NCBI GenBank assembly: GCA_047495785.1
Contig: JBLDXI010000003.1
Span: forward strand, 2,418,001-2,482,000
Source of the DNA: Lepidodermella squamata
Lineage: Eukaryota > Animalia > Gastrotricha
Reading direction: 5' to 3'
DNA length: 64,000 bases
The notes under the pieces were generated by a model. That model worked only from the letters and a program-made list of their open reading frames with translations. It searched no databases and was not told the DNA's origin. Position 1 is the stretch's first letter. Every line of letters begins with the position of its first letter. Both the position numbers and the translations under genes were made by a program. Of the stretch, positions 1,350-48,538 are shown in pieces.

Positions 1350-2385
1350 CTTAATGTCCGAGTCCCAAACTTGTTGATAAACTTCGCAGATTTGAGTTAA
1401 ATCTAGCAATTGATCTCCCTCATTCATTTCTTTCACCGCCTGCACTGCAGCCATAATTTGACCAGGTTTCATCGCTTGGCAGGTTGTCGCGACCAAATTT
1501 CGCCGGTCTTCAACAGCTTTTTCCGCATCAGTGATGAGTTCTTTACGAAAACTTTCAATTTTAAGGCGCAATTTTTCAAGCAATACGTCGCAATGGTAAT
1601 TGATTTGGCGGGTAAGCTGATTTTCGTGCTCAGCAAGCTTCGAATTGACTGCCTCGGTCTGCTCATTAGATGACTTCATCCATGATTCCAAACGCTCCGA
1701 AAACTGTAAAAATTAAATATTGAAACATTTCAAAAATAAACAAAAAATGAAAAACTTACATTTACTGAAACCCAGCTGCATTCGAGTCGAAGGCGTTCAG
1801 CGTGAACAATGGAACAAGGCTCGCAGAATCTTTCATCACAATGAGGGCACTTTAACGCGTTCTCATTATCGAATTCGCAATGAGGACAAGTTTCACCGAC
1901 GTGCATGAATTCTTTGTAGCTGGACGAAAGCAACCCTCGAGAAGCCTCAAATATTTTTTGCATTCCAACATTGACAGGTAACTCTAAACAAATGAAAGGA
2001 ATCATCCATCATTCGAGGTTAATTTATTAAATTTATTAAATTAAATTTAATTAAATTTATTAAAACTCACGATCGAAAAATTCTGGATCAGAATCAGGCG
2101 CTAGGCATGGAGGGCAAAATTCAGGTTTGACGGCATGTTCGTCGCCACTTCCGTAAGCACATTCGTAGCAAATCGAGTGACCACATGCCGGGAAAAGTGC
2201 CATCGGCAGGGAATATTCATCGTAACATCGGTCGTAGGGTGATTTTTTACAACTAGGGCACCTTAGGATCTGATCAAATAAATTCGAAATAAAATTATTT
2301 TGCAAAAAAACCACGTGGAACAAACATCTAGCAACAGTCCATCGCTAACGTATTCTTCACGCCGCTGACGTTTAGCGGCCTGCAT
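1350..2385 (-). CDS. TRIM-like gene A0: RING + B-box-like + coiled coil (partial; 3' exon(s) absent or off the left edge)
   Basis: ATG 2385 (MQAAKRQRREEY); RING exon ~2070-2270 (CPSC...CGHSICYEC...CPPC); B-box exon ~1760-1985 (CPHCDERFCEPCSIVH); coiled-coil exon 1350-~1704; GT-AG introns. Near-duplicate of A1. Confidence 0.75.
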
Positions 2386-2499
2386 CTTACGATTGGAACA
2401 AAAAATAAAAGGAAGCTCTATGGAAAATTCCGAAACATTTGACAGTTATAAATTTTCTTGTAGATTGTTAAACGAGCCCTCATCACCGATTTATTGAAT

Positions 2500-4600
2500 A
2501 CGATATAAGTCATTCTCACTAAACTGGAAAAGACAAGGCAATCTCCTTCGGGTTGGTTGAACGATCGGCATATATCGATGCTGCTCAAAAGCTGCTTCGA
2601 TTTGAACATCTGCTTGAGGACCTGGAATCTCCTCTCATGTCACAGCTGAAATTCGGAAAATATTTTTTTTAACATCAAATTCACTTTTTTCAACATCAAA
2701 TTACTTTTTCTATCATCAAACTCTATTTTCAACAGCAAAATTCAGAAATTGTTATTTGATAAGGAAGAATATACTTTCATGATGACGTTGTGGATTTTAA
2801 GTGCCTATCACCTCTGGGGATGTTAGCGTGGCCCAGACTCGTGCCAGACCAATGAACAAAACTTCTGAGGAAGGAGGGAGCCTCAGGAAGGCGTGCTCAT
2901 GAAAGGAAGCTATTATCAACAGTCAGGGGTCTGCGCTAATCGATTATTGGATTCTTTGGCGATTCAAAGTGGTTGAAAGACATTTTGAATTATAAAGAGA
3001 CCTTGCAAACGGTGACGACATCACCTATTGTTATTGTCGCTACATGCGAAAGTCCGGCTACGAACGATGTCAGTGCCAGGCAAAGTTGCTTCTCGGCGGC
3101 GAGACATGGGTGCTGATGGCATCCGGGGCGAAGCAGCGTCACAAGACGGCGTAAAACGTTCCGGCGGCTTGACCTTGAAGGGCCCTGACTTATTTCTCTC
3201 ATTTGAATCATTGTCTTTGCAAAAATAAGAATCGTAAAATTATTCGGACAAATATTTAAAAATTCAATATTTTTTGGCCAAAAATCAAATATTTGTCCGT
3301 AACTTTGCAAAATTGCAGCTAACTCAATTTTCTATAATTTCTTGAACGGGTTCGACATCAACAAACTACATTGTTCTTCCGAATTTTCTGTTATTTTTCC
3401 GGACCGGTCATCATCAAGGGCTTTAATGAGTGTGGATCGCAAAAATTAGGATATCGAAATTTGCTGTTGAAAAAAGAGTTTGATGATAGAAAAAGTAATT
3501 TGATGTTGAAAAAAGTAAATTTGATGTTAAAAAAAATGTGACCCTGAAATTCACTCCAGCGGAAAATCAGCTCGCGTTTCAAAGCCATCATGATGGCAAC
3601 CATTGGCTTCTGTCATGGTTGGTGAGTACAAAAGTTCTCATTATTTACAGCCTGCCACGGAATGACCTGAGTGATGGCAGCTATGTACACTGCCGCAGTC
3701 GAGAATGGAAAGTTGGAAATCGAAATTCCTGGCCCCAACTTAACTTTGAAAAACAATGGTTCAGATTGCGGCGTCTTCGCCATCCCAACATGGCCGAAAT
3801 CGTGCTAAATTGTGACCCGGCCGGAGGATGCGTCTGTCTTGCGGAAGTACCTGTTAGACTGTTTTGTCAACCGAAAAATCACGCGCTTTCCTTACACGCG
3901 GGCTTGGAGTTCCCACGCGTCAGACGCGGGCGCCGGAAGGCGAATGGTGAGCTGGCGATACTCGCTGATTGTATGACCTCGACAGCGGAAGATGAGCCAG
4001 ATCAAAAGAAACCGGTTACCTGAACTTTAACCAGACATTTCAAACAATCTCGATCTTCGGATCCAAAGCGATTGAATTCAAACTGGCTAATTTTTCAAGC
4101 TAGAAAAGGATAAATGAAAATTAAATTGAGTCCAAGGTTTTTTAATTTTCTGAATACTGGAAATTTTAATAGGAATTTTAATAGGAAACTGGAAATTTTT
4201 TGGAAATTGGAAACAAAATACCGGGCTACCTGCATAATACTCATCTTGTAAGTAAGCCGGAATCTTTATGATCTTTCGCATGTAAGACGCCATTTTTTAA
4301 TTAACAAGCGCTTATATTTCAAGGTAACTGCTATTGTTGTATCTCCAATTTGAGAAAAGAACAGTAACTGTTCTCTCCACCCTTCTTGCCCAGCTGGATG
4401 ACCTAAAAACCACCTCGATTCTAAACTCAAAGTCGATCAGCGCGTTACGAATGTAGAACAAGCGTATCGTAAAATGTTGAACTTTTTGAAGCAGATCCAA
4501 GAAAAAGTCGACCACGGCGAATATAATTATCCTGGGAAGGATGAATCTTACGTAAGTTTCATCGAAGAACCGACTTTTCTTGTCACATTATGATATTTCT
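2500..4600 (-). pseudogene. Degenerate spliced coding remnant of unknown function (possibly the 3' part of A1)
   Basis: Canonical 45-nt intron gtaagg...ctaacag (~3895-3851) joins WELQARV to YFRKTD; the frame continues across the excised 2655-3543 element (..RWSEFQL*HERRFQVLKQMFKS..) with several stops. Confidence 0.4.
2655..3543. mobile_element. Non-autonomous Mutator-like element (889 bp)
   Basis: ~90-bp imperfect TIRs (2655-2743 / 3456-3543) with internal AACATCAAA subrepeats, GG...CC termini and a 9-bp TSD CTGAAATTC (2646-2654, 3544-3552); possible internal FLYWCH-like fragment (YCYC..RCQCQAK..H, ~3025-3140). Confidence 0.8.
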
Positions 4601-5379: not shown

Positions 5380-5953
5380 TGTGGCGGTGACGCCACCTGG
5401 CGTCGTGACACGCGCCCGTTCGGCACGCGTTCGCTTCTCCCGCCACGGCGCCTACTTCCCTACCTAAGCGCAACTAGCACACTTTCATTCATCAACTTCT
5501 TTACTTCACAACTTGTTATTTTACTATGCTCTACCGGTACCTCGTCCTAGTCCTCTCACCCTGGCATTGGCTTCTGTAACTTATCAAATTCCATCTTTAA
5601 TCCGAATTTCTATCGTTAATTAGAACATATTTTATCTATTTTATATCGGTGCGTTGTATCGATCCGCTTACCTCAACCGTACCTGCCTACTGCGCGATCG
5701 GTAATTTGTTGTTTACTATCTAAGTTCAAGGCCTAAACTTACCTTCCTCTAACAGCTATTCTTGCCGTCACTCTAAATATTGCTCCTCCCGGCTGACCGT
5801 TTCGCCTTAACACGAACCCGGTATGCGACCTCGCCGTATAATATTTTACCTCCTTTCCTGACACATTGTTCTGTATACAGGGCCTTGATTTTACCTGAAT
5901 AAAAGACCTGATTGCCAACAACCAGTTGTGCTCCTATTGGTCTCACTGTTACA
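5380..5953 (+). repeat. 5' LTR
   Basis: TGTGGCGG...GTTACA; direct repeat of 12122-12695; contains AATAAA near 5898. Confidence 0.97.
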
Positions 5954-5954
5954 C

Positions 5955-5972
5955 TGGTGCATCGGCCGGGAA
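5955..5972 (+). other. Primer binding site (tRNA-Gly)
   Basis: TGGTGCATCGGCCGGGAA, 1 nt after the LTR, is complementary to the 3' end of metazoan tRNA-Gly(GCC) (...TTCCCGGCCGATGCACCA). Confidence 0.85.
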
Positions 5973-5980
5973 ACTCCGTC

Positions 5981-7660
5981 ATGCCCGCAAAGACCCGCTA
6001 TGGGAAAGCGCCTCCCTCGCCTGTCGTGTCGCCTCCTCCTTACTCTGCAGCGACAAGAGGCAGTGGACGTGGCCGTGGCCGCGGAGGTCGTGGTGGCGCC
6101 CGTAACAACCGGAAACAGCCTGACTTCTCGTCGCCGACGTCGCCGGCCGACCCTGCCGTGCCCTGGGGATCGCCGTCACCCGTTCGCACCGGCAAGCGGC
6201 AGCCCTCGCCCGCCCCGCGGAATCGGACGCCGCAGAGGCCGCCGCCGCCTTCCGGCGCACCTGTCTCCGACTTCGAGAGGCTACTGGCGTTCGCCGATGT
6301 TGCCACGCTGGAACGGTTTCTCGAGGACGAATTCGCCGTCATCGCCGGCATGCCGTCAGGTCCCAATCGCGCCATCCGGGAAGCGCGTCATCACCGCATT
6401 CTCGAGCTGCACGAACGGCGCGTGGATGAGGAACGCGACCGCGCTCTGCGAGACCGCCTGGTTGCCATCGCCCCGGCTGCAACCGCCTACCGCCTCGATC
6501 CGACGGCCCCAAGCCGCCCGACGGTCCCGCCACCACCGCCGCCGTCAGTCACGTTTTCGTCGGCGCCTGTGAACATCGAACCGGCCGCAATTCAGCCTCG
6601 TCCGGGTCCAACTACGGCACCGCCTCCTGCTGCTACCTCGAACCTCAAGTTGGCTCGGTTGCAGCCCACGTCCGCCAGCCTCACCTCGACGGTCCTCTCG
6701 GCTCCAACCAAGTTGAAGGACCTAGTGGAAAAACAGGGCGCCAAGGAGCCGCTCCTTACCTTCGCCGCCCGCTGCAAGGCCACTCTCGCTACGGTCGAGC
6801 TGCCCGACATTTCGGCCCTCACGAACCTGCTGCATGGCTTGTTCAACGACACGTGCAAGGCCGCGCTCAGCAGCATGCTGGCAGCAGGCATCAGAATCGA
6901 TTCGCTGGACCGGCTTTTCGACGAGTTGGCCCTCCGCGTGCCTAGCACGGCGGTCGACGAAGAGCCCAAGCAGCAAGCTGGCGAAGCCGTTGTAGTTTTC
7001 GGTGACCAGTGCCGACGTCACGTGCGGCACCACTACCCGGGTCTACCTGACGCTGCCTCGGACAAGCTGGCAGCGCGCCTTTTCCTGGCTGGCCTACGCC
7101 CTGGCGAGCTCAAGCGCCATGTTACCCTGCGCGACGAGGAAGCCCGAGCCTTGCGCGGCGAATCGGCCCCGTTAGCTGTGCTTCTTGCCCACGCTTCGAC
7201 CTTCGAACGGGCGGAGCTCCGTGTCGCCCCAGAGGACAAGGCCGCCAAGCAGAAGCCCGCGGCAATCACCATCGCCAGCGTGGCGACCTCCGAGCCCGCG
7301 CCGAAGCCTCCGCCTCCTCGGCAAGACCGACCGCCGCAACAGGCCCGCCGACAACAGTTTCAGCGGCCTCCGCCTCAACGGCCACAGCAACAGCAGCAAC
7401 CGCCGCAACAACCGCCTTTCCAGCAGCGGCAGCAACAGCCGTTCAACCCGCCGCCCTCTCGGCCGAACGATTCGCGCCGACCATTGCGCCGCGATCCATG
7501 GCCGGAGGCTATTGACCAGTTGGCGTTCTACCACCAGCTGGGTGTCTGTTGGAGGTGCGGCGCGGCCGATCACTCCTTCCGCGACCCGGGCTGCCCGCAG
7601 ATGTCGGCGCAGCTCCGAGCCGCCGCCCAGGCGCCCGTTCAGAGCAATCAGTCAAACTGA
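5981..7660 (+). CDS. gag: Gag polyprotein
   Basis: First ATG after the PBS; Pro/Arg-rich N-terminus, capsid-like QQAGEAV..F motif, Q/P-rich stretch, zinc knuckle CWRCGAADHSFRDPGC. Confidence 0.92.
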   Translation: MPAKTRYGKAPPSPVVSPPPYSAATRGSGRGRGRGGRGGARNNRKQPDFSSPTSPADPAVPWGSPSPVRTGKRQPSPAPRNRTPQRPPPPSGAPVSDFERLLAFADVATLERFLEDEFAVIAGMPSGPNRAIREARHHRILELHERRVDEERDRALRDRLVAIAPAATAYRLDPTAPSRPTVPPPPPPSVTFSSAPVNIEPAAIQPRPGPTTAPPPAATSNLKLARLQPTSASLTSTVLSAPTKLKDLVEKQGAKEPLLTFAARCKATLATVELPDISALTNLLHGLFNDTCKAALSSMLAAGIRIDSLDRLFDELALRVPSTAVDEEPKQQAGEAVVVFGDQCRRHVRHHYPGLPDAASDKLAARLFLAGLRPGELKRHVTLRDEEARALRGESAPLAVLLAHASTFERAELRVAPEDKAAKQKPAAITIASVATSEPAPKPPPPRQDRPPQQARRQQFQRPPPQRPQQQQQPPQQPPFQQRQQQPFNPPPSRPNDSRRPLRRDPWPEAIDQLAFYHQLGVCWRCGAADHSFRDPGCPQMSAQLRAAAQAPVQSNQSN

Positions 7661-7698
7661 CAGGGCAGACGGGCCAGGTGGCCGCCCGTTCTTGCCCT
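7651..7698 (+). other. Putative -1 ribosomal frameshift signal
   Basis: pol is in the -1 frame relative to gag; G-TCA-AAC immediately precedes the gag TGA and is followed by a GC-rich stem AGGGCAGACGGGC (7662-7674) / GCCCGTTCTTGCCCT (7684-7698). Confidence 0.7.
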
Positions 7699-10600
7699 CC
7701 CGACGCCGCCTTAGCCACCCTGTCCGCCGCCGTTGATGCCCTGTGCGACTTCCCCCTTGCTGGAACCCCCGTTACCGGTCTTGTTGACACAGGTGCTAAT
7801 GCCACTATTGTTTCCGCCGCGCTCTGCCGCTTCCTGGCGCTGCCCATCATCCCGTTGCCCACGCCTGTCACTATGAGAACCGCCGATGGTCAGATCGTCG
7901 ACTCGCGCACGGTCCTCGGCACCGCCCAGCTGCCCTTCTCGTCAGCGTTCGGACCTCACCAGGCCTTTGTGTTGGCCAGCCCTAGTCACGACCTCATCGT
8001 CGGCTTGGATTGGTTGCGTCGACACCAAGCTGTGGTCGATCTGCGACAACTCCGCCTCCGTGGCCTCGACTGGCACTTGCCGATCCGCCTCTCGCCGCCG
8101 GCCGGGCCTCGCTGGGCCTCGGTTTCCGTCGATGGCCGGCCATTCTACGACGCCCAGGTCTTGGTCAACGGTCGCATGACTACGGCTCGCGTCAGCACCA
8201 GCTCGCCTACCTCGATCGATTGCATGTCGATGTTGGGTGCAAATTGGGCTCCCTTCGCCCCCGGCTCGCTTCCGCGCCTGCCTTCGTCGGCTGGTCGTGT
8301 GGTCCCGCTTGGCCTCGGCTTCCTTCGCTTGCACACCTCGACCCATGCGACCGACCTGCCCGTCTTGGTCGTGAGTGGCGACGAGCACCGCCTAGTCCTC
8401 GGTGGCTCTCTGCTGTTCGCAAATCGTGCCGAGTTCAACCTCGCCGCTGGCTCGTTCTCGTTCGCCCCGCCGTCCGCGCCCGACGCGCTCCCCGCCGACG
8501 TCGAGGACCTTATCTCGCGCTCGGTGTCTGGCCTCGGTGACGACGATGCCGCCGCCATGCGTGCTTTACTGGTCGAGTTCGCGCCGGTGTTCAGCGACCG
8601 CTCGATGGGTATCCAGCTGAAACAGCCGCTCCTCATCGAGACCACGGCTACGCGTCCGATCAGCGTGCCTCGCCGCTACATGGGGCCTCACAAGAAGGCC
8701 GAGCTTCGCAAGCACTTGCGCTTCCTCCGCGAACGCGGCCTGATCGAGGTCGGCAACTCACCGAACGCTTGCTGCCCCGTCATCGTGCCTAAGCCCTCTG
8801 CGGCCGAACCGAACGGCACCCGCTTCACGGTCGACTTCCGACCCCGGAACAAGTTCCTACCCGACCGGTATCACGTCCCGCCGCTCTGGGAGGATGTGAC
8901 GGAGCGACTTCACGGGGCTAAGTTCTTCTGCCGCCTTGATCTTCGCCAGGCGTTTCACCAGCTGCCGTTAGCGGAGGAGTGCCGCGACCTGACGACGTTC
9001 TACGGCGCCGATGGCGAGAAGTGGCGCTACGCCGTGCTACCCATGGGCCTGTCGGTTAGTCCTGCCCTGTTGCAGTCCGCGATGCAGAACGAGATCCTGG
9101 CTGGTCTTCTGGACCTCTGCATCGAGTACCAGGATGACTGCCTGGTCTACGCCGACAGTGTCCCAGAGCTACTTCGCCGCCTCCGCCTGGTCTTCGAGCG
9201 CTTCCGAGACTTTCGCGTCAGCGTTTCCGCCGCCAAGTGCGAGCTCGCTCGCCCCGAAGTAAAGTTCCTTGGCCGTCGCCTTTCCGCCTCTGGCGTGTCT
9301 CCGGACCCCGATCGCACCCGCGACATCGCGCTCTTTCCTCGCCCTACCTGCCGACGGGATGTTCGCTCGTTCCTGGGCACCTGCAATTTTCTACGCGCAC
9401 ATCTGCCTGACTTCGCGACGCTAGCCGCGCCCTTGTCCGCGCTCACCTCGAACGCCGTGCCGTTTGCCTGGTCGGACGACTGCGACAAGTCGTTCCTCGC
9501 CTTGAAGGCCGCCTTCCAGCAGCCGGGCATCCTGGTCTACCCGGACTTCTCCCGAGCGTTCAAGGTGATGTGTGACGCCTCGGACGTCGGCCTCGGTTGC
9601 CTGCTTATGCAAACTGGTGATGACGGTCTCGACCGGCTGGTTGCTGCGCACAGTCGCCTGCTTTCGCCCGCCGAGCGGAAGTACCCAGCCCTCGAGAAGG
9701 AGTGTCTTGCGATCGTGTTCTCGTGTGAACGTTTCCGCGAATACCTGCTTGGCACCAGGTTCGTCCTCGAAACCGATCACAAGGCGCTCCTGTGGCTTCA
9801 AACCCTCCGTGATCCCAGCAAGCGTGTCTGGCGTTGGTTGGAGATGCTCGGTGACTACCAGTTCGACCTGGTCCACCGTCCGGGTCGCCTCAATCTCGCT
9901 GACGGTCTTTCACGGCCATCCGTTGAGCCGGACGATGTTGGCTATACTTCCGACGACAGCACCCTGCCCGACGTGACCTGCGCCGCCTCGCTGTCGGTGG
10001 CCGACTCGTTCCGCCTCGACCCCGCTGCTCTCCGCGCCGCCCAGTTGGCCGACCCCGATCTCGGCCCCGTACTGCGGCATCTGGACCTCGGCGAGCCTCT
10101 GCCTCGGCCACTCTCGGCCGGTTCGGCCCGGCTGTTACAGCTGCAGGACACGGTCTCGAAGGACGACGCCGGCGTCTTCTACACGTCGGTATCGGACCGC
10201 TTGTTCCCGCGGCTGTGCCTCATCCTGCCCGCCGTCTACGTGCCCGAAGTCATCAGAACTGCCCACGACGCGCCGATGTCTGGTCACCTGGGTCGCCGCA
10301 AGACCCTCGAGCGCATCCGCGATTACTGTTGGTTCCCAGGGTGTTACAGCGCCGTCCGGAAATTCTGCCGCGATTGTGCCACGTGCGCCGCCCGAAAAGC
10401 CACGAATCAGTCCACGACAGTGCCGCTAGTACCGCTTCGCCACGCCGACGAGCCGTTCGCTTTGGTCGCTATGGATGTGGTTGGGCCTATTCAGCCGGCC
10501 AGCAGCCAGGGTCATCGATGGGTGCTAACGTTCTACGACGCCTTCTCCAAGTTGTTGGTCGCCTACCCGCTGAGGTCAACGAAAGCGCCCTCGATCGTCG

Positions 10601-11580
10601 CGTGCCTTGAGCGGTTCATCGCGGATTTCGACCTACCCGAGACGCTCCTCACCGACCGTGGCACCAACGTGGACTCGCTCGCTGTCCGGATGTTCTGCGA
10701 AAGCCTCGGCATTCGGAAGATACGGACGAGCCGTTTCAACCCCCGTGGCAATAGCCTGGTCGAACGGAGCCACCGGGTGCTGGCTGACATCATCGCAACC
10801 GGCCTCGATCCTAGTCAACCGCGAGCCTGGCATCAGCAGCTGGTTCGGGCCCTGCGCGCCTACAAGACCGCGGTGCATGAAGCCACTGGCGTAACTCCCC
10901 ACGAGGTCGTCTTCGGCTACCCAGCCCGCACGGCGATCAAGCTCTTAGCCGGCCCGGCCACTGGTCCACTTGACCGTCCCGATGGTCCACCAGCGCAACG
11001 CGTTGTGTCCCGCCGGTCTCGCCTCGACGCCCTCTGGCAGCACGCATCCGCCAACCTGGACCGGGCACAACACCACCGCCGCCTCGTCAACGATCGGCAC
11101 GCCAACTCGCGCCGTTTCTCAGTCGGCGACCACGTCGGCGTCCGCCTCGAAGACCACGAACGCCAGGGCAAGTTCGCGCCCCGCTACCGAGGCCCGTTCG
11201 TCGTCACCGCCGTCAACGAGGCCAACAATGACTACCGGTTGGCATCGGTCGAAGATCCGAACACAACGCTCCCTTGGACGAACCGGCGCAAGCTGGTCTC
11301 GTTTCCCGCCTCAGCGGTCGCAAAGCCGCTCCCGCCCTTGGCCTCAGAGGCCCCGTCGGACGTGGCGCTCCCGACGCGTATCCAAGCGCCCTCACCGGTA
11401 ATGGCCCTCCCGGTGGGCAATAACGGGCCTCCGACCGTCGTCCGGCCTCTCGTGGCGGGGGAAGAGACAGCGAAGCTGCGCCCGCTCGCCGCCCTGAGAC
11501 CGCCCGACCGCCTTAACCTCGCCGTCCTCCTGCGCCTCGCCTACCTTGCCGTCGAGGTCGCAAAGCGACTCAAGCGCTGA
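7651..11580 (+). CDS. pol: Pol polyprotein (protease, second protease-like domain, RT, RNase H, integrase)
   Basis: LVDTGA protease; RT LDLRQAFHQ/LPMGL/YQDD; RNase H CDAS..ECLA..TDH..ADGLSR; integrase HHCC, D-D-E core, GPF motif. Open frame 7549-11580. Confidence 0.97.
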   Translation, partial: VKLTGQTGQVAARSCPPDAALATLSAAVDALCDFPLAGTPVTGLVDTGANATIVSAALCRFLALPIIPLPTPVTMRTADGQIVDSRTVLGTAQLPFSSAFGPHQAFVLASPSHDLIVGLDWLRRHQAVVDLRQLRLRGLDWHLPIRLSPPAGPRWASVSVDGRPFYDAQVLVNGRMTTARVSTSSPTSIDCMSMLGANWAPFAPGSLPRLPSSAGRVVPLGLGFLRLHTSTHATDLPVLVVSGDEHRLVLGGSLLFANRAEFNLAAGSFSFAPPSAPDALPADVEDLISRSVSGLGDDDAAAMRALLVEFAPVFSDRSMGIQLKQPLLIETTATRPISVPRRYMGPHKKAELRKHLRFLRERGLIEVGNSPNACCPVIVPKPSAAEPNGTRFTVDFRPRNKFLPDRYHVPPLWEDVTERLHGAKFFCRLDLRQAFHQLPLAEECRDLTTFYGADGEKWRYAVLPMGLSVSPALLQSAMQNEILAGLLDLCIEYQDDCLVYADSVPELLRRLRLVFERFRDFRVSVSAAKCELARPEVKFLGRRLSASGVSPDPDRTRDIALFPRPTCRRDVRSFLGTCNFLRAHLPDFATLAAPLSALTSNAVPFAWSDDCDKSFLALKAAFQQPGILVYPDFSRAFKVMCDASDVGLGCLLMQTGDDGLDRLVAAHSRLLSPAERKYPALEKECLAIVFSCERFREYLLGTRFVLETDHKALLWLQTLRDPSKRVWRWLEMLGDYQFDLVHRPGRLNLADGLSRPSVEPDDVGYTSDDSTLPDVTCAASLSVADSFRLDPAALRAAQLADPDLGPVLRHLDLGEPLPRPLSAGSARLLQLQDTVSKDDAGVFYTSVSDRLFPRLCLILPAVYVPEVIRTAHDAPMSGHLGRRKTLERIRDYCWFPGCYSAVRKFCRDCATCAARKATNQSTTVPLVPLRHADEPFALVAMDVVGPIQPASSQGHRWVLTFYDAFSKLLVAYPLRSTKAPSIVACLERFIADFDLPETLLTDRGTNVDSLAVRMFCESLGIRKIRTSRFNPRGNSLVERSHRVLADIIATGLDPSQPRAWHQQLVRALRAYKTAVHEATGVTPHEVVFGYPARTAIKLLAGPATGPLDRPDGPPAQRVVSRRSRLDALWQHASANLDRAQHHRRLVNDRHANSRRFSVGDHVGVRLEDHERQGKFAPRYRGPFVVTAVNEANNDYRLASVEDPNTTLPWTNRRKLVSFPASAVAKPLPPLASEAPSDVALPTRIQAPSPVMALPVGNNGPPTVVRPLVAGEETAKLRPLAALRPPDRLNLAVLLRLAYLAVEVAKRLKR

Positions 11581-12112
11581 GATCTGCACGAAAACTCTCG
11601 ACATCGATCGGTCCTTCGATCCGCTCCGCCTTGGCGCCGTCTGGCGTCGTTCGCCCGACGGGCGACGGGTATCGTCTTCATTCTCGTTTGTTGTCCTGCC
11701 TTACTACTGTTGTTGTACCGTCCTGACTATCCGGAAACTTAACAGCGCTGTATATAAATATTGTAATTTTTGTACCTGTCCTTTAATTTCTATATGTCGC
11801 TTACCTGTAAATCCGCTGAACCACTGTTTTATTGTAAAATTCCCGCGTGGCAAACCGATGACGCCTGTAAAATAATGATAGTACTTCTTTAATTCAATCC
11901 GATTTAATTTTCTAACAGTTTTTACACTTTCAAACGTTGTTCTTGTTTTTTTTTCCGCCTTGTTGTGATACTCTACGATTTCAAAACTTTTACCGAATGC
12001 CTCTGTTTCATAATGTAAATCTTTTGTATCAATATTTATGCATACCGGGTTCCATCTCAATTTATTGACTATGTATTATAATTTTTGTCCGTACGCTTCG
12101 CTTCATTTCAGT

Positions 12113-12121
12113 GGGGGAGAG
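12113..12121 (+). other. Polypurine tract
   Basis: GGGGGAGAG immediately 5' of the 3' LTR. Confidence 0.85.
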
Positions 12122-12695
12122 TGTGGCGGTGACGCCACCTGGCGTCGTGACACGCGCCCGTTCGGCACGCGTTCGCTTCTCCCGCCACGGCGCCTACTTC
12201 CCTACCTAAGCGCAACTAGCACACTTTCATTCATCAACTTCTTTACTTCACAACTTGTTATTTTACTATGCTCTACCGGTACCTCGTCCTAGTCCTCTCA
12301 CCCTGGCATTGGCTTCTGTAACTTATCAAATTCCATCTTTAATCCGAATTTCTATCGTTAATTAGAACATATTTTATCTATTTTATATCGGTGCGTTGTA
12401 TCGATCCGCTTACCTCAACCGTACCTGCCTACTGCGCGATCGGTAATTTGTTGTTTACTATCTAAGTTCAAGGCCTAAACTTACCTTCCTCTAACAGCTA
12501 TTCTTGCCGTCACTCTAAATATTGCTCCTCCCGGCTGACCGTTTCGCCTTAACACGAACCCGGTATGCGACCTCGCCGTATAATATTTTACCTCCTTTCC
12601 TGACACATTGTTCTGTATACAGGGCCTTTATTTTACCTGAATAAAAGACCTGATTGCCAACAACCAGTTGTGCTCCTATTGGTCTCACTGTTACA
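12122..12695 (+). repeat. 3' LTR
   Basis: Same length as the 5' LTR; only one substitution noticed by eye (G5887 vs T12629). Confidence 0.97.
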
Positions 12696-13310
12696 AGCCC
12701 GGTTCTTTGGTGCGCAATATGGATGTCGGCGGAAAGCCGGAACGAGTAGACGAGTCTTTACCCTCATCAGAGGCAGATTTCTTCGCAGCTTCGGCCTGCG
12801 CTTGCTGGACTAATTCCGCAATTATACTTTTACTACTATATTATTATACTGCGGAATTAGCAAGCGAAAGCCGATGCTGCGAAGAAATCTGCTGCTGCCT
12901 TGTAGCGCAAATACGTCAGGAAAGAAGCTATCATCCCGCCCAAAAAGCGTGGAATGTTTTTATAGAAAATTGCTTCTTTTAATTTTGACAATTTTTTATA
13001 GTGTTCAATGATGTTCTAGACGAAAGTGCGCCTGTGGAAGATTTGGAACAGGCTCTTGACAGCCCATCTATCTCTCCGCTACATCCAGTCAATTCCACCT
13101 CACCTCGATTACCTCTCTCTCCACCTCAGGACGTAACAAATGGAGCCCTAGATATCGAACACCCAACCAACCAAACAACCAAAAGCGGGCTTAACATCGA
13201 TTTGTCAGGTGTCATCACGAAAATAAACAAACGTCATACGGCTGAAAAGGTAATTCATACTTTCTTCAAAGCAAATTTGGCATAAAGGCTTCTATATAAC
13301 ATTCTATAAC

Positions 13311-39822: not shown

Positions 39823-42206
39823 TTATTTTCCGGCGTTTTTGAACGGTTGGATCAGCCCAACATCGCCGGAAGCAGTAGCTATGTCCAACGGAGTTTTTCC
39901 TTCACTATTCTTCGATTTGATGACGGGATAATTCTTCAACAAAATTCGAACAATCTCGTAACAACTCCCCTGAGCCGCAATGTGGAGAGGCGTATTACCA
40001 GCAGGGTCGGGCACGGTGAAATCTGCTCCGAGCTCAATAAACAGCTTGACAAGTTCAATGTGATTTTCCGATACCGCAATTAAAGCGCAAGTTTTTCCAT
40101 TGCCAGTCACCGCATTGATGTTTTTGGTAAATGCGGCCAGTTTACGGGCAACTTCTACGAGTCCTCTTACAGCTGCGATGTGCAGCGGCAATCGGCCAGA
40201 TTCGTCCTTCACACCAGTTAGATGTGGCGCAGCAGTGAGAATAAGATCCAATACTTCAAGATGTGTGACGTCTCCGACTCGATGAAGAATGGTTTCACCG
40301 CCAGATAAGCGTTTTTCAAGTTCAGCCCCTCTTGAAAGTAGAAATTTGAAAGATTCCACTGTACCCTCCTCACAAGCTGACACGAGAGGTGTAGCCCCAT
40401 TTAGGCTTGTTGCGTGCAAATCAGCCGCCGGGAGACTCCAGAAATATTTCAGCAGCTCCTTGGAATGACTCATTACCGTCCAATGAAAAATCGTCTGGCC
40501 AGCCGAATCTTTTATCCTGACTAATTCTGGAACTTTTTTGACCAGATATTTCGCTACTTCAAATTTGTCGTAGCGCAGCGCCCATTGCAAAGCCGTTGCA
40601 CCAACAAATTGACATCGGGGCCCACTTTTAGCACGTACAGTAGCATCGACACCCAGTTTTTCGATTAAATATTGCACTATTTCCAGATTCCCGAATGAAG
40701 CTGCTATCATCAAGGGCGTCAAGTTGTGATCATTCGGATCGGGCCGCGATGCAGCTATCAGCAAACTTCCGTTTGGTAAATATTCGCTATTTTCGTAGCT
40801 TTTAACGGCATCCAAATCACCGTCCTTCATCGCTTGGTAGAACTTTGTAATTTCAGCCAGAGGCGCGATCTAAATTATAAATTTCGTTTGATGATGGTTT
40901 GGAAGTGTTTCCGATTTCGGATTATGAAATTCAATCAACTTTTGCTACAATTACTGAATTCAAATCGTTAAAATTACCTGCTTTTTTGTCAAATGACGAC
41001 TTCTGCACTTTAGGGCAGCTGTGAGGTACGCAACAGCCTTATCAATCCTTATTCGACTCGACTCGAGGCACAATTTGTACTTGGAAAACATCGTATGTTC
41101 GCCCTCTAGGCTTGAAAGCTGTGAAAATGAGCAGAATAGATATGTCGATTGAGCAAAAAATTGAGAGTTATAAATGTATTACCACCTTTTTGTCAATTTC
41201 GATTGCTGCCCGGTGTAAGTTGACCACATCCGTTATATCAACGAAAAATGGCGACAGCCGGTTGATTTTGCTGAGGCTACTCGCTTGCTGCTGAAAATCA
41301 CCGTTAGATAACACTTCGAAATTGTTCTTCATACAATCCTTGGCTTTTGCTATAATAGCCTCATGAAACGATCTGCATTTTCGCAACATTTGTTCCTTGA
41401 GCTCTAAAAGAGCAGCTGAGACTTCCTGAATAATTCCGTCAATTGATGATGATATTTCATCCTCTCGATTCTCGCAATCTTCGGTAATTTTTTCGACCAC
41501 GTCATCCACTAGTTCATCGAATTCCTGCTCCAAAATACGATCTCGTCTTTTAGAAAACTGAAATTGAGAATAATCCATTAGCAAATCCTAGTACGAGTAC
41601 GCATTTAAATTACATTCGAAGCAATAAACGCAGTTACAAGTCTCAATAATTCAGCGTGAGCCGGCAGACAAGCTCGGCAGAATTTTCGATCGCAATGAGA
41701 ACACAGCTCAACAGCGTCTGCGAATAGCCCTTGATGAGGGCAGAAATAGCCCAGACCAGAATCTTCTCTTTGTTCGCCATTTTTTCCGGGTTTCAAGTCC
41801 TCCAGAACACGATAAGCAACAAAGTTTGTCGGATAACCTAATTTGGAAAATAGTTTATGTTTCGATTGAAAATTTTCAGTTTTTCACCTTTGACGCCATT
41901 TTGCCCCAGCGGATTAGGAGTTCGGCATTCAGGGCAGCAAATTATACCGCCGGACGCGATCGATTCGGCGCATTTGAAGCAATAAGTATGGCCACATTTC
42001 GGTAAAATCACCGGGTTATCAAAATTGCCCAGGCACACCGGACACGTCACGGACTGCAACGAAAGTAATTCCAAAGTCAATAAGTTCTAGCTTTTAAAGC
42101 AATTAATCACCGCAAAAATAGAGCCTCCAATCGGCACAGACTCGCCTAAACTAATTCTTTTAGTTCCGCTCACTCGGCCAGGTTTCTCGCAGTTTCCTCG
42201 CTTCAT
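39823..42206 (-). CDS. TRIM-ankyrin gene A8 (multi-exon)
   Basis: ATG 42206 (MKRGNCE); RING ~41888-42053; B-box ~41614-41837; CC ~41185-41557; linker ~40978-41118; ankyrin exon 39823-~40869. Confidence 0.88.
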
Positions 42207-42350
42207 TACAGGAGCGAGCTAAGATCAAAAAGTTTCTACCATAGGTTCAAAAATTTTAATTTTCATAATTTGGAATTAAGGAGAGAAAAACGGGACATCC
42301 TCCCTTCGATTTCTAGTTTGACTCCAAATCCAACTAAATTGCTTATTGAG

Positions 42351-45300
42351 CTAAGACGTGCATAACAATTCAGGGGCTTTTTCGACCAGATATTTCGCTA
42401 CTTCAAAGTTGTCGTAGTACAGCGCCCAGTGTAGAGCCGTTGCACCGTCCTGACTGCACGTGGGCCCGCTTTTTGCACGTACAGTACCATCGACACCCAC
42501 TTTTTCGATTAAATATTGCACCATTTCCAGATTTCCGAGAGAAGCTGCTTTCATCAACGGCGTCAAATTGTGGTCATTCGGATCGGGCCGCGATGCAGCT
42601 ATCAGCAAACTTCCGTTTGGTAAATATTCGCTATTTTCGTAGTTTTTAACGGCATCCAAATCGTTGCTATCGATCGCTTGATAGAATTTTCCAATTTCAG
42701 TCGGAGTTATCTAAATTATAATCCGTGTGCATAAACAGAGCGACCAGGAAATCAGGGCAAACAAGTTTCAGAGCTCGAGTAAGGGCCTAATCTACAGTTA
42801 AGCTTACGAAAACTTGCTTTTGAATTAGGCGTTCGTTCTGTACCCTAAGGTAATCTAGACAACCTGCGAAGCTTGGATAATATTGAAATTACTGAAAAAA
42901 TATAAAAAATCCACCCAGGTTTTTCACCAAGTATTCACCGAATGCCCCAGTGGCAATAAATGATATGTCTTTGGCAGCGCGGCAGAAGGAACCCGTAGGC
43001 TTGTCTATTGTTTATCTTGGTGTGATCTTTTTGCACAAATTTTGAATCATTACCATGCAAAAAATGCAGCGATGATTCATATTTATTATATAGCTGTTGT
43101 TCGCACTAAGATATGACGACGTCAGGCAGGTAAAGTCAATGCGGTCGAAAAAAATTGTCCGATCTATAACCAAATGTTCAAGCTGTTCAAGCGGTAAATT
43201 ACCGCCAGTACTTGAACAACAGGCTACAGGCGTGAAAAAGCAGTCATTTAACGTCAACTATCATGCGAAAAGAATTGTTTGCCTTGCATCGCGCCATCTA
43301 ATATTAAGTGAATACTAATGTAATAGCAGTAAAAAGGATGCTACGTATTACCGCGCTTTGAGTGTGACTTGCTTGCTTTGACACTCAAGGCACGGTAATA
43401 CGTTAATACAGTGTAACCCCGATTTTCCATCATGCGATTTTCCGCCAATTTCGATTTTCCGTCAGGTTTTTAGCCGCCCCCGCCGACACCCATACAAAGT
43501 ATCATAACAGTGATATCCCGTCATTGATTTTCCGCCAAATTCGGATTTTCCGCCAGGTAGCTATTTCTACCCCGATTACCCGCCATTTTCAAATGGCACA
43601 TACGCGCTTGCTCCTATTGGCTGGCGTTTAGTGCGCGCAAAAATCAATCCACGTGGACGCGCGCAAAATCTCGATTATGCACTAATTCATTTTCTATAAT
43701 TCGATTAGCTTATTCGAACTTGAAGTTTTTTAAATTGTTAAGACTTTTTAAGCGAAATTAAGCGCGCACAAGTTGTAGCCGTGCCCGCATTTAGTTTAGT
43801 AGTGAAATACTGCGCGCGGCAATCGCAAAGGCTAACTTTCGACTTTCCCAGCGGATTTTATACCAAAATTAAATTCATAATCGATGTTGCCAGAGAGGTG
43901 TTCTATTTATGGCGGTATTGCGGTATTGTAGATTTATTATAACGATTATGAGAGTATAACTAGCTTAAAATAATTTCAAACGTTTGCGAAGCATAATTTT
44001 AATAATATACATTCGTTAAAACCATATTCGGTAGCCCTGACATTTTAAGGAGGTATTTTCGATTTTCCGTCAGTTTTTTCACGGAACCGCAAATGACCGC
44101 AAAAATTCCGCCAACCCCAATTTTTCACTTGTTAACGGTCAAATGTAATAAATATGCATATGTTGTACGCCTTTAGAGGATCTAAGCTTATACGGCGGAA
44201 TCCGATCGGCATCAATCGATAGCCCTTGATTACAGCAATCGATTGATATATGATGATCCATAGTGAACCTCACGGTTCGGCCATTATTTTGATGAAATAT
44301 AATGCGCATATCCTAAAGGCGTATAACACATATTAATGCTATTTCGATGTTTACCCATTGTATTATACGGATTTATGGCAATGAATTTTACTGCAGTGTG
44401 TGACGATAAAATGACAACCAACAAAGCCTGAATGCACACGTTTCTTCAACATGTGATTGTTGAAAGCGGAAAGCGTCTTGCCGGCATGTTTAGCTGAATG
44501 TTTTTTGAAAAAAATATAAAGTATTTCGAACTAAGTGTAACGTCGTTGGCGGTAAAATTGACAAAGAAATTCAACAAGCCTAGAGGTTCCGTCTGCCGCG
44601 CTGCCAATGATGTGATTGGCAAAAGAATAATTAGTGTGAATGAATCATCGAGCAAATGAGACATCGAATTTCGCTGCGGAATTAATGCTGCTGGGCTCTT
44701 TGCTTATAAACAACTTCCAGCATACGCAGTCGATTCCTGCTTGAAAATTGCAAAATCATAAAGAGGTACCAACCTGCTTTTGTTCCAGGGGGCGAACTTC
44801 ATACGTCAAGGCGGCTGTGAGGTTAGCGACGGCCTTTGCGACCATTTTCGCACTTTTCAGCAGGTGGATAGTGGAGTCGTAAAACATCGCATGCTCACCC
44901 TCGAGACTTAGAAGCTGATTAAAAAAACGGGCAAAAATACAAATTTTGAAGTAATTGAGTCAAGCAGCAACTTGGATTTAACAAAATTTCAGCCATTTCC
45001 AAATTTAAGGCGACTCGTAAATATTCGACTGGTAAATTTTAAGAATCAATGTGAATCTTTTTATAAAAAATTACTGGGCTACTTATCAATTATTAATTAA
45101 TCCGATCAACAAAGCCCAGTAACTCATGAAAATTTTGATATTCCGGAAAAAGAATCAAGTTCGGTATCACCTTTTCGTCAGTTTCAATTGCCTTTCGATT
45201 CAATTTTACCGCATCATTTAAATCGAGGACGAACGGCGATAGTCGGTTGTATTTGCCTATGCGATTTACGAGCTGCCGAAAGTCACCTCTAGATATCATT

Positions 45301-46196
45301 CGGTAATTTTTCTTTAAAATATCCTTGGCTTTGACCTTTTTAGCGTCATAGAAGGAGCGGAGTTCTAGTAAAAGTTGTTCCTCCAGTTTCGATAAAGCAG
45401 CTGAGATTTTTTGCATAATCTCTTCAATAGCCGATGATATCTCAGACTCTTCATTCTCGCAATCTGCGTCGATTTTTTCAACCACGTCATCCAGTAATTC
45501 AACAAATTTCCGCCTTAAAATACAATCTCGTCTGGTAGAAAACTGAAATTCAGAATACCCATATCAAAGCAGTTCCCCCTGTAGTTCAATAAGAATTACA
45601 TTCGAAGCAATAAATGCAGTTTCCAATTTCAATAATTCAGCGTGAGCAGGCAGACATGCTTTGCAGAATTTTCGATCGCAATGAGAACACCGCTCGATAA
45701 CGTCGGTGAATATACCCTGATGTGGACACTCATACCCAAGGGCAGATCCATCCACTTTTTCGTCTTTTCTGCCGAAGTTCAAGTCCTCCAAAACACGATA
45801 AGCAACAAAATTTGTCGGATATTCTAATTCAACAAATAAGTAATTCACATTTTGTTAAAAAATCGTAGTGTTTCACCTTTAACGCCGTTTTGCCCAAGCG
45901 GATTGGAAGTTCGGCATTCAGGGCAGCAAATCTTGCCGTCACTCGCGATTGATTCGGCGCATTTGAAGCAATAAGTATGGCCACATTTCGGTAAAATCAC
46001 CGGGTTATCAAAATTGCATAGGCACACCGGACACGTCACGGACTGCAACGGAAAAATTTCAAATTTGTATTGGTTACTGTTTCTTTTTGCAATTAATCAC
46101 CGCAAAAATAGAGCCTCCAATCGTAACGGACTCGCCCAGACTAATTCGTTTAGATCTAGTCACTTCTTCAGCTGTTTCGCAGTTTCCCCGCTTCAT
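42351..46196 (-). pseudogene. TRIM-ankyrin gene A9, ankyrin exon truncated after ~2 repeats, TE debris in last intron
   Basis: ATG 46196; RING ~45877-46042 nearly identical to A8; B-box ~45600-45823; CC ~45170-45542; linker ~44774-44915; ankyrin fragment 42351-~42710 ends abruptly (PELLCTS*). Confidence 0.8.
42720..44760. mobile_element. Composite TE or MITE debris in the A9 intron
   Basis: ~2-kb insertion relative to the ~110-nt equivalent intron of A8; TACAGTG.. start at ~43407 with repeated GATTTTCCGYCA motifs; inverted TACGCCTTTAG/CTAAAGGCGTA repeats at ~44166-44323. Confidence 0.55.
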
Positions 46197-46574
46197 ATTT
46201 AGAAGTCAGTAAAAATAAGTAGTTCCTACAGAAGTATACCGTAGGTTAAATAAGCAGGATCCAGGCAATCATGAATTAAAATCGCATTAGTTTCTTTCGA
46301 GATGAATATCCTCTTCATCAGAAATACTATTCTTCGTCAATTTGAAATTTTCTAAAATCGATATATCTTCTTCATATCTGCTTGTAGGTATTCAGCGTTC
46401 TCTTCGTAACACTCTTAGATTGAAATTTCTAAAGAAATTAAAATAAATTTATTAAATTTGCGGTATAGATTTATTCTCCATGAAATGACAATTCGTTATG
46501 AAAGACAACAACTTCATTATTTAAAATTAATTATTGAAAGCAGGTCATTTTGTAGAATGATATAAAACAACAGT

Positions 46575-48538
46575 TTAGAGCGAATCAGCCAATTGAAAAT
46601 GTCCTTCACTGAAAGCTACGTCTCGTGGTAGCTGTTTACTTTTGTTCTTGTATTTCAGCAGTTGAGGCCGAATTTCAGCAATAAACTTTGCAGTTTTATC
46701 ACAGTTGTCGAATGCAGCGAAATGCAGCGCAGTATCTCCATGAGCATCGGCTAAATCAGCCAGAGCCGGGTAAAATTCAAACAAATACATGACGAGATCC
46801 AAATTGTTACTGGATGCAGCGAGATGAAAAACAGTCGCCTTCTTCCCAGTAACTTGAGAATTTACATCAGCGCCGTTTTCAATTAAACATTTCACAGCTT
46901 CCAGGTGTCCATTTTGAGCCGCGAGATGGAGGCTATTGAAACCAGCAGAGTTTTTGTAGCTCAAACTAGCTTTCTTTTCCTTGATAAGGAAATTAATCAG
47001 GTCAACATGGCCACCCGCAGAAGCGCAATGAAGAATCGAGGAGCCATTTGAACAATGCTCCTGAGATAGTTCCGGGGCGTATTCCAAGAAAAATTTAACC
47101 ACCTCGAGATGACCGCTAACTGCAGCCCAGTGAATTGGCAACGAAGGCGAGGTCTCATCGACTTCCTTGTTTCGAGCATGAATATCTGCATCATGCTCAC
47201 GTACTAAATACTTGACCATGTCGACATTCCCATGATTAGCTGCGTACATTAACGGTGTAAAATCCAAGTGAATATCATCCTTATGATCAACAATAAAACG
47301 CCGGCAGTCATCGGAAATTGAAGGACGTTCCAACAACGCTTTGATGTAAGCAAAATCGTTGCATTTCAAGGCAGCTCTAAATTGCCGAATTTCAAATGGG
47401 TTGTCATATTGAGGACTAGGATGGTGATCCCCAACAGTTTGCTTCAATTTGATACATTCCAATAATTCAGCAGTCAGTTGCTCAAAAACTCGGGTATCAT
47501 GTTCCAGGGCCATTTCACAGCTCAAACCAATTTTATTCTCAGCATCTTGCAGCTTCGAAAATTTGAAAATGCATGATACTCAAATTTTGAGTGAAATTAC
47601 TTACATCTCTATCGACACGAAGAGCTTGCTGATACACCGGCACAACGCGACCAACAGTTGAGTAGAGAGCTGAGAAGTTTGAAAGCTGTTTGACGCTCTT
47701 GGTTACACTTTCGATGTCAAGTTTCAAAGTACTTGAGCACATCTTTGACTCGAGCCTAACCCGCTGAATGTCTTCAAAGGCCTCAAGTTCAGACAATATC
47801 TTGTCTCGACGAGCGTAGGCAGCAGTCCTGAAGTTTTCTATCATTTCGTCGATGGATGTGACAACCTCACGGCGAAGAGAATTGGTTTTCTGATGCAGCG
47901 ACTGAACAGATGAATTGTTGGAATCAAGACTTGTTTCAAAATAACGGGACTGAAACTACGGAGAAGAAGAAAAAATGAAATATGCCGGAAACCCAAGAAA
48001 ATCGCATTACGTTGCTAACGATCCAACTTGACTTCAGCTTCAGGGTTTCCAAGTGACTAACTATGCATGCGTTACAAAACTTGCCATTGCAGTGGCTACA
48101 GATAGTGGAGTTTTTCGTCAGCATGTCATGATGAGGGCAGCGTTCGCCAAGTTTCCCACTCTTCCGAGCTGAGTTCTCCTTTCCAAATATTTCAATGGCT
48201 CGTTGAATCGAAAAATTAGTTTTCAGACCCTCCAAGCCGTCAGCGCCGAGGACATTTTCGAATCTGCACTCTGGACACGTGAGGGTTTTCTTGGTTCGAC
48301 GAGCACGCAAGATCTCTTGGGCACATCCGAGGCAAAGTGAATGGCCACAGCCAGGCAGTACTTTCGGCTTGCAGTAGAAATTGAAGCACACAGGACAAGA
48401 GAAAGCCTATAATTCAAATTGAGTAAGTCGGTGAAAACGCTGGCTGAGAATGTAATTTACAGAGAGTATCTCGCCATCGATTTCAACTTTCTCATAGCGC
48501 TCCACGGTAACACGTGTCGTATCCAAAGCTGCCTGCAT
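46575..48538 (-). CDS. TRIM-ankyrin gene A10 (divergent member, fewer introns)
   Basis: ATG 48538 (MQAALDT); RING and B-box in one exon ~48011-48406 (CPVC..GCGHSLCLGC..CPEC..CSHCNGKFCNACIVSH); CC ~47605-47950; linker plus ankyrin exon 46575-~47555 with canonical TPL.YAA..G and TALHFAA repeats. Confidence 0.88.

What the first reader, a model, noticed from the sequence alone, without database searches (positions are those of the whole stretch)
1350..48538. Tandem array of 11 RING-B-box-coiled-coil genes, nine capped by ankyrin repeats: a candidate diversified TRIM-ankyrin E3 ligase system
Seen: the many short minus-strand ORFs are exons of one repeated gene unit (short basic exon, C3HC4 RING, CxH..CxHC...FCxxC...H zinc finger, coiled coil, linker, single ~1-kb ankyrin exon), repeated head to tail. 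Known: TRIM proteins are RING E3 ligases whose C-terminal domain selects substrates; the standard vertebrate C-terminal classes (PRY-SPRY, NHL, PHD-BROMO, FN3, MATH, ARF, filamin, TM) do not include ankyrin repeats, and clustered lineage-specific TRIM expansions are typically immune-related. Inference: a birth-and-death family of substrate-recognition ligases using ankyrins as the variable sensor, possibly against pathogens or transposon proteins.
Basis: partly seen in the sequence, partly recalled or inferred. Interest (0 to 1): 0.88.

Follow-up and report, generated by a model that had tools for sequence, protein, structure and literature searches.

The report
TRIM-like ligases with ankyrin tails
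A microscopic animal (probably the gastrotrich Lepidodermella squamata) has a row of eleven related genes, eight intact, for ubiquitin ligases whose front half most resembles the fly muscle ligase Thin but whose target-binding end is an ankyrin-repeat arm; I found no paper on this design, and an immune role is untested.

Summary
Observation confirmed. The minus strand carries 11 head-to-tail RING/zinc-finger/coiled-coil units; nine have a linker plus ankyrin exon. Eight splice to intact 600-713 aa frames, U2 has a truncated ankyrin arm, U10 looks like a wreck and U11 has no tail in the window. An RNA-like run shows all five predicted introns of unit U4, and one contig joins coiled coil, linker and ankyrin. 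Related metagenome animals carry the same tandem genes, mostly with coiled coil and ankyrins in one exon, so the ankyrins are not separate genes. The 'B-box' is non-canonical (seven motif ligands). It matches arthropod Thin/Abba, a TRIM-NHL ligase (hhalign 99.6% over RING plus finger), and shares an intron position with it. Best reading: a Thin-derived front half whose NHL propeller was replaced by ankyrins, then expanded separately in each lineage; the tree alone does not settle this origin. dN/dS does not exceed 1 in any domain or site class, and the coiled coil diverges faster than the ankyrins, so a diversifying immune sensor is not shown. No paper describing TRIM-ANK was found. This scan already noted the family in at least seven other windows of this genome. 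Verdict: new variant of a known kind.

The parts
46575..48538 (-). U1, intact, 600 aa. Exons 48538-48461, 48406-48011 (RING + finger in one exon), 47955-47605 (coiled coil), 47552-46575 (linker + ankyrins in one exon)
   Evidence: AlphaFold model of exon 2, mean pLDDT 89
42351..46196 (-). U2, 452 aa, ankyrin arm truncated at 119 aa. Exons 46196-46101, 46042-45877, 45823-45600, 45542-45171, 44914-44774, 42710-42351; last intron 2063 nt
   Evidence: an RNA loose end at 42712 continues in the U2 linker exon at 44776; a DNA contig spans the truncation without differences
39823..42206 (-). U3, intact, 681 aa. Exons 42206-42111, 42053-41888, 41837-41614, 41557-41186, 41118-40978, 40869-39823
   Evidence: RNA joints 42053/42111 and 41118/41186
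36348..38877 (-). U4, intact, 691 aa, reference unit. Exons 38877-38782 (basic), 38732-38567 (RING), 38514-38291 (finger), 38239-37868 (coiled coil), 37616-37476 (linker), 37424-36348 (cap + 9 ankyrin repeats)
   Evidence: all five introns seen as RNA joints; one 420-nt contig joins coiled coil, linker and ankyrin
33487..36119 (-). U5, intact, 675 aa
29894..32705 (-). U6, intact, 682 aa; linker and ankyrins lie in one stop-free frame (31141-29894) containing a predicted 51-nt in-frame intron; RING lacks the linchpin arginine
23195..29364 (-). U7, intact, 683 aa; predicted 3387-nt GC-AG intron between coiled coil and linker
   Evidence: this intron not tested with RNA
18829..22003 (-). U8, intact, 713 aa
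16023..18675 (-). U9, intact, 681 aa, divergent. Exons 18675-18604, 18546-18369, 18319-18099, 18046-17690, 17639-17493, 17093-16023
14835..15635 (-). U10, probable pseudogene copy of U11: one RING cysteine lost, about 200-nt deletion through the finger, no linker or ankyrin
1350..2385 (-). U11: basic exon, RING with a long loop, finger, coiled coil; no linker or ankyrin in the remaining 1.3 kb of the window
5380..12695 (+). Ty3/gypsy-type LTR retrotransposon between U10 and U11: 574-bp LTRs differing at one base, 5-bp target duplication, gag-like ORF 5912-7660, pol ORF 7549-11580. Described only.
13254..14598 (+). Degraded Helitron-like (Pif1/UvrD helicase) fragment next to the cut end of U10

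Best explanation
These genes encode RING E3 ubiquitin ligases built on the TRIM plan. Shown: one spliced, expressed gene joins a basic first exon, a TRIM-type RING, a Thin/Abba-type zinc finger, a long helix, a linker and an ankyrin arm (cap + about 9 repeats; shorter in U1). Inferred mechanism: the long helix dimerises as in other TRIMs, the ankyrin arm binds the substrate where NHL or SPRY domains normally do, and the RING activates an E2~ubiquitin conjugate to ubiquitylate that substrate. The basic first exon may be a nuclear localisation signal. Inferred origin (about 0.7): a copy of the Thin/Abba TRIM-NHL gene kept its front half and swapped the NHL propeller for an ankyrin exon, in an ancestor shared with the metagenome animals. 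Tandem duplication then built separate arrays in each lineage, with paralogues under purifying selection and probably differing in substrate.
For: RNA joints at all five U4 introns, absent from the DNA run; CC-linker-ANK on one contig. CC to ANK in a single 414-492 aa frame in relatives, and finger to ANK in one stop-free 524-aa frame in L009. RING model matches the TRIM2 RING, Foldseek E 2e-7, rmsd 1.7, Z 10.9; linchpin arginine in 7 of 11 units. L052 is a Thin orthologue: six NHL repeats, E 4.7e-186 to the Drosophila Thin NHL domain. The family RING+finger profile aligns to it over 133 columns at 99.6%; the finger part scores 21-28 bits on Thin against 5-6 on sea-urchin TRIMs. The same phase-0 GT follows codon 14 after the last histidine in all 10 complete window fingers, all 15 genomic relatives and 8 arthropod Thin loci. 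Species-specific clades: window U2-U8 100/95, ENA animal 93/84. dN/dS 0.11-0.45; second haplotype or paralogue nearly all synonymous. The Thin RING is required for function in flies (PMC6030163).
Against: No ligase assay and no substrate. No single RNA record spans RING to ANK; the link is a chain of joints, and X1 is only guessed to be RNA. The RING alone scores higher on sea-urchin TRIMs (55-57 bits) than on Thin (40-43), and an AU test does not reject family+urchin (p 0.42; only 3 outgroup rows). Thin sequences were retrieved with a pattern built from the finger, so that motif match is partly circular. Coiled-coil homology to Thin is weak (E 0.035). U6, U9 and U11 lack the linchpin arginine.
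Confidence: 0.72

Rival explanations
1. An intracellular immune or anti-transposon surveillance system: each paralogue's ankyrin face recognises a foreign protein and the RING destroys it or signals, as with vertebrate TRIM-SPRY clusters. Compatible with the best explanation; it adds a target class.
For: Large tandem arrays with turnover in at least two lineages; binding-face positions are the least conserved class, 23% identity against 43% on the back face; many further clusters noted in this genome (unchecked notes). By analogy from general knowledge: fish finTRIMs and nematode F-box/MATH expansions.
Against: dN/dS never exceeds 1; the highest is 1.0 on 15 codons of the truncated U2. A variable concave face is generic to ankyrin proteins. 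Coiled coil and linker diverge faster than the ankyrins. The closest described relative, Thin, acts in muscle and cell death. No infection data.
Confidence: 0.35
2. Housekeeping, developmental or germline protein-turnover ligases for the animal's own proteins, expanded by local duplication and drift under mostly purifying selection.
For: Purifying selection in all domains; expression of U2, U3 and U4 in an ordinary RNA run; basic, NLS-like first exons; Thin-type ancestry; the same genome carries many other large orphan families (unchecked notes).
Against: Conserved housekeeping substrates do not readily explain near-complete replacement of the paralogue set between related animals or the highly variable binding face.
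Confidence: 0.4
3. Non-catalytic scaffolds or decoys: the RING mainly dimerises or pairs with an active partner (as BARD1 does with BRCA1), and the proteins act as ankyrin adaptors.
For: U6, U9 and U11 lack the linchpin arginine; U2 is expressed with a truncated arm.
Against: Eight zinc ligands in 10 of 11 RINGs, the linchpin in 7, and the RING is the most conserved domain.
Confidence: 0.12
4. The ankyrin ORFs are separate genes interleaved with RING-finger-coiled coil genes.
For: Gene callers split them; no single read spans the whole transcript.
Against: Spliced CC-linker-ANK contig; coiled-coil exons end in a splice donor, not a stop; CC and ANK share one exon in relatives.
Confidence: 0.02

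Closest known systems
Thin/Abba (Drosophila tn), TRIM-NHL class VII, subfamily C of PMC3503706
   Same: RING followed by the same atypical seven-ligand zinc finger with His inside CxHC and Glu seven residues after the last His; same intron position after the finger in several arthropod loci; long helix next
   Different: C-terminus is an ankyrin arm, not six NHL repeats; first ligand pair is CxH rather than CxxC; no long low-complexity spacer; multicopy tandem arrays
Human TRIM2/TRIM3
   Same: Best solved-structure match for the RING and the helix after it
   Different: Canonical B-box2 with two terminal His; filamin + NHL C-terminus
Vertebrate TRIM-PRY/SPRY clusters (TRIM5/21/25, fish finTRIM)
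   Same: RBCC plus a recognition domain, tandem lineage-specific expansion; fish TRIMs also gain new tails (PMC3137616)
   Different: No SPRY; positive selection and antiviral activity not shown here
RING + ankyrin ligases: BARD1, Mind bomb, plant XB3/XBAT (general knowledge); Atlas ANK+RING clusters
   Same: Combine a RING with ankyrin repeats
   Different: No finger-coiled coil tripartite unit; in MIB and XB3 the RING is C-terminal to the ankyrins; BARD1 adds BRCT domains and few repeats
FEM1A/B/C (ankyrin substrate receptors of cullin-2 ligases)
   Same: Ankyrin arm used to pick ubiquitylation substrates; top Foldseek hits for a relative's arm
   Different: Only 13-16% identity and scores tied with unrelated ankyrin proteins; best sequence match is not to the FEM1 N-terminus; FEM1 has no RING of its own

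Membership tests
TRIM/RBCC | N-terminal C3HC4 RING | tested here: met
   Pfam zf-C3HC4 above cut-off; 8 ligands in 10 of 11 units; fold matches TRIM2 RING, rmsd 1.7
TRIM/RBCC | One or two B-boxes (canonical: eight ligands, two zinc ions) | tested here: inconclusive
   No Pfam zf-B_box hit; weak Trim66 (E 0.002) and ANCHR-like B-box hits below cut-off; seven motif ligands, last His missing, extra invariant His; aligns in register with the TRIM2/3 B-box region and with the Thin finger, itself called poorly conserved (PMC6030163). The finger's fold was not tested alone.
TRIM/RBCC | Coiled coil directly after the B-box | tested here: inconclusive
   Long helices predicted at pLDDT about 90; hydrophobic period 3.5-3.8 in window units; sequence homology to the Thin coiled coil weak (E 0.035); no TRIM coiled coil among the 60 best PDB hits
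TRIM/RBCC | RING, B-box and coiled coil in fixed order in one polypeptide | tested here: met
   RNA joints at each U4 junction; in-frame models; intron-free RING-finger-coil frame in P0021
TRIM/RBCC | Antiparallel dimer and E3 ligase activity | not testable with these tools
   Only monomer models; linchpin arginine in 7 of 11
TRIM-NHL (class VII; Thin/Abba) | C-terminal NHL beta-propeller | tested here: not met
   C-terminal exons are ankyrin only
TRIM-NHL (class VII; Thin/Abba) | Thin-type RING + atypical finger | tested here: met
   hhalign 99.6%, 133 columns; shared intron position; tree 92/98, alternative not rejected
ANK-RING ligases (Mind bomb, XB3/XBAT) | RING C-terminal to the ankyrin repeats | tested here: not met
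   RING is N-terminal; ankyrin exons end in stop codons
FEM1 | FEM1-specific ankyrin/TPR arm with VHL box | tested here: not met
   Generic similarity only; proteins end shortly after the last ankyrin repeat
Antiviral TRIM clusters | Positive selection on the recognition surface | tested here: inconclusive
   dN/dS on binding-face positions 0.34-1.0, few close pairs, pairwise counting only
Antiviral TRIM clusters | Induction by infection; binding to foreign proteins | not testable with these tools
   No challenge data; contigs cannot give expression levels

The most novel reading that the evidence does not exclude
Gastrotrichs built a genome-wide, fast-turnover repertoire of single-chain receptor-ligases (natural ankyrin-RING degraders) from a TRIM-NHL gene and use it as an intracellular recognition system against viruses, intracellular microbes or transposon proteins, possibly in the nucleus, converging on vertebrate TRIM-SPRY immunity with a different binding scaffold.
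Probability: 0.3. Interest if true: 0.85.

Novelty: new variant of a known kind. Interest (0 to 1): 0.58.

Why it matters
It adds a C-terminal class to the TRIM family that two published evolutionary surveys do not mention (PMC3503706, PMC3137616), with a traceable candidate parent, so domain swapping and expansion can be followed in a little-studied phylum. If the arms have different substrates, the family is a natural library of ankyrin-targeted ligases, the format engineers build as DARPin-RING degraders, and a concrete entry to gastrotrich immunity or protein turnover in a culturable species. The finding is real but not unique to this window, and function is untested.

Tried and rejected
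Separate-gene reading: rejected. Ankyrins as the hypervariable domain: not supported. FEM1 origin of the arm: considered from a recalled resemblance, not supported. Exact look-ups of window proteins found nothing. Word-seeded homologue searches were weak (the one ankyrin hit, P0157, is a plain ankyrin protein) and see only 0.55-1.75x lengths, so their blanks say nothing. Back-translated locus searches failed. The Atlas gave only generic TRIM or ANK+RING clusters. The mei-P26/NHL-2-like gene beside a family member in L007 is not the parent (lowest scores). Accession searches in papers were empty, so the ENA and Logan animals are unnamed. Left out on the operators' instruction: any database search or fold of a joined (spliced) model; exons and natural ORFs were searched by reference, and joined models were used only in local scripts for frame checks, dN/dS and trees. 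Eight pattern hits from assemblies labelled, or likely to be, human gut (L029, L035, L036, L045, L055, L066, L072, L083) were not analysed. The LTR element was described only.
Full report
What is in the sequence. The minus strand from 48538 to 1350 holds eleven copies of one unit. Profile scans find 11 RING, 11 zinc-finger, 11 coiled-coil, 9 linker and 9 ankyrin segments and no others. Hand-built models use GT-AG introns (one GC-AG), mostly 48-59 nt, at conserved phases. Eight give intact frames of 600-713 aa: U1 and U3-U9. U2 is open but stops 119 aa into its ankyrin exon. U10 has lost a RING cysteine and about 200 nt through the finger, and ends beside a Helitron-like fragment. U11 has no tail in the window. 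A young Ty3/gypsy element (LTRs differ at 1 of 574 bases, 5-bp target duplication) lies between U10 and U11.

One gene, not two. Two public runs hold this DNA. Laid on 36820-42800, the RNA-like run X1 shows joints at all five predicted U4 introns, and one 420-nt contig runs from coiled coil through linker into the ankyrin exon; the DNA run X2 is unspliced. Two U3 introns are also seen, and a loose end at 42712 continues in the U2 linker exon, 2 kb away. No single record spans RING to ankyrin, and X1's RNA status is the tool's guess, though clean intron removal supports it. Independent support comes from relatives. A finger-exon profile searched against 1.84 billion representatives found 21 proteins, all short gene-caller fragments; the ten looked up are unnamed ENA or Logan entries. 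Their contigs carry tandem RING-finger genes followed by a single 414-492 aa frame holding coiled coil, linker and ankyrins; in L009 one stop-free frame runs from finger to ankyrins. L008 and L010 have RING and finger in one exon, like U1.

Organism. Not given. The alanine aminotransferase at 51595-53085 has no named match above about 62%; its best match (69%) comes from the same ENA sample as L006 and L007. Window GC is 39-45% outside the transposon. The scan lists 1993 windows on 147 pieces, and the runs date from 2015 and 2024. This fits the Lepidodermella squamata assembly (122 Mb, 157 contigs, 43% GC; PMC11660948). It is an inference; the metagenome animals are unnamed.

The domains. The AlphaFold model of U1's RING+finger exon (mean pLDDT 89) matches the TRIM2 RING and its following helix best (E 2e-7, rmsd 1.7; Z 10.9); the finger was not covered by those matches. 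Seven of eleven RINGs keep the linchpin arginine. The finger reads C-x-H ... C-x-H-C-x4-C-x2-C-x3-H: seven motif ligands, an extra invariant His, no final His, and no Pfam B-box at cut-off. The next exon is predicted as long helices, followed by shorter ones and the ankyrin solenoid, compatible with the TRIM hairpin but not proof of it. U4's arm is a cap plus nine repeats; its resemblance to FEM1 is generic. Most first exons carry basic clusters that look like nuclear localisation signals (inference).

Origin. A degenerate DNA pattern for the finger, run on JGI metagenomes, returned arthropod-like genes with the same finger. One, L052, encodes 1225 aa with six NHL repeats and matches the Drosophila Thin NHL domain at E 4.7e-186; its start also agrees with the Thin primer in PMC6030163. 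The family's RING+finger profile aligns to it end to end at 99.6%. A phase-0 GT follows codon 14 after the last His in all ten complete window fingers, all fifteen genomic relatives and eight Thin loci, where the cDNA-like L052 continues into the coiled coil. Caveats: retrieval by the finger motif is partly circular; four other Thin loci lack that intron; the RING alone scores higher on sea-urchin TRIMs (55-57 against 40-43 bits), while the finger scores higher on Thin (21-28 against 5-6); the tree groups family and Thin at 92/98 with only three outgroup rows and the AU test does not reject family+urchin (p 0.42); coiled-coil homology is weak though roughly in register (E 0.035). I put the Thin origin at about 0.7.

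Evolution. Window U2-U8 form one clade (100/95) and seventeen genes of the ENA animal another (93/84); U1-like genes sit near the base. Neighbours are closest relatives (U2/U3/U4, U5/U6), as tandem duplication predicts. This is birth-and-death evolution. Mean identity among paralogues is RING 47%, finger 44%, ankyrin 36%, coiled coil 25%, linker 23%, and dN/dS is 0.11-0.45 where dS is measurable. A second haplotype or close paralogue in the DNA run differs at 20 ankyrin codons, 2 of them non-synonymous, and 6 coiled-coil codons, all synonymous. Canonical binding-face positions are the least conserved class (23% against 43% on the back face), but their dN/dS is 0.34-0.66 in full-length pairs and 1.0 on 15 codons of U2. 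That fits differing specificities and is also what any ankyrin family shows; it is not evidence of an arms race.

How it most likely works. Shown: gene structure, splicing of U4, RING fold, purifying selection, lineage-specific turnover. Inferred from established TRIM biochemistry: dimerisation through the long helix, substrate capture by the ankyrin arm, ubiquitin transfer by the RING with an E2 (0.72). Whether substrates are foreign (0.35) or the animal's own (0.4) cannot be told from sequence.

Comparison and novelty. It works like a TRIM ligase and probably descends from a TRIM-NHL gene. It is not a TRIM-NHL (no NHL), not a Mind bomb or XB3-type ligase (domain order) and not FEM1. Strict TRIM membership is likely but rests on an atypical B-box and a weakly matched coiled coil. 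Paper searches found no RBCC-ankyrin family, and two TRIM surveys never mention ankyrins; the library misses most subscription journals, and no architecture database could be queried. The scan has noted the same family in at least seven other windows of this genome, including adjacent ones (unchecked notes), so the array probably extends beyond the left edge. New in this report relative to those note summaries: RNA support for the coiled coil-ankyrin join and the Thin link with a shared intron.

Verdict. Real, expressed, a new variant of a known kind; interest 0.58. The immune-repertoire reading has probability about 0.3 and would deserve 0.85.

Noticed in passing
window 5380-12695: Very young Ty3/gypsy LTR retrotransposon: GC about 64% against about 41% around it, LTRs 573/574 identical, 5-bp target duplication, open gag-like and pol frames overlapping in different frames.
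   Followed up: partly
window 51595-53085 (-): Intronless alanine aminotransferase; its 69% homologue in ENA contig L001 is also a single ORF.
   Followed up: partly
window 55485-63947: Cluster of related, strongly basic, low-complexity Gly/Lys/Arg/Ser-rich proteins on both strands; already noted by the scan (s1-407780).
   Followed up: no
window 53974-55397 (+): Two ORFs, probably one gene with a predicted membrane anchor; weak DUF6492 hit (E 1.6e-4, below cut-off); may be a glycosyltransferase-like protein (inference).
   Followed up: partly
window 36901-37161 and 37970-38021: The DNA run holds a second version at about equal depth, roughly 8% different and almost all synonymous: a deeply diverged allele or an unassembled close paralogue.
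   Followed up: partly
window 41118-40978 (U3 linker): The middle of U3's linker translates unlike U2 and U4, as if two compensating frame shifts had occurred; the overall frame stays open.
   Followed up: no
window 24443-27829 and 42711-44773: Long introns of U7 (3387 nt, GC donor) and U2 (2063 nt) look like insertions; content not identified.
   Followed up: no
window 2662-2743 / 3456-3537; 12773-12892; 60838-62122: Short inverted repeats and palindromes, possibly MITE or DNA-transposon ends.
   Followed up: no
L007:3764-6844: A mei-P26/NHL-2-like TRIM-NHL gene lies about 2 kb upstream of a U1-like family member in the related animal; probably coincidence.
   Followed up: partly
L015, L020, L022, L031, L034, L065: AT-rich, rotifer-like metagenome contigs carry other genes with the same Thin-type finger, some without an obvious RING and none with an ankyrin hit: the module may have been redeployed elsewhere.
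   Followed up: partly
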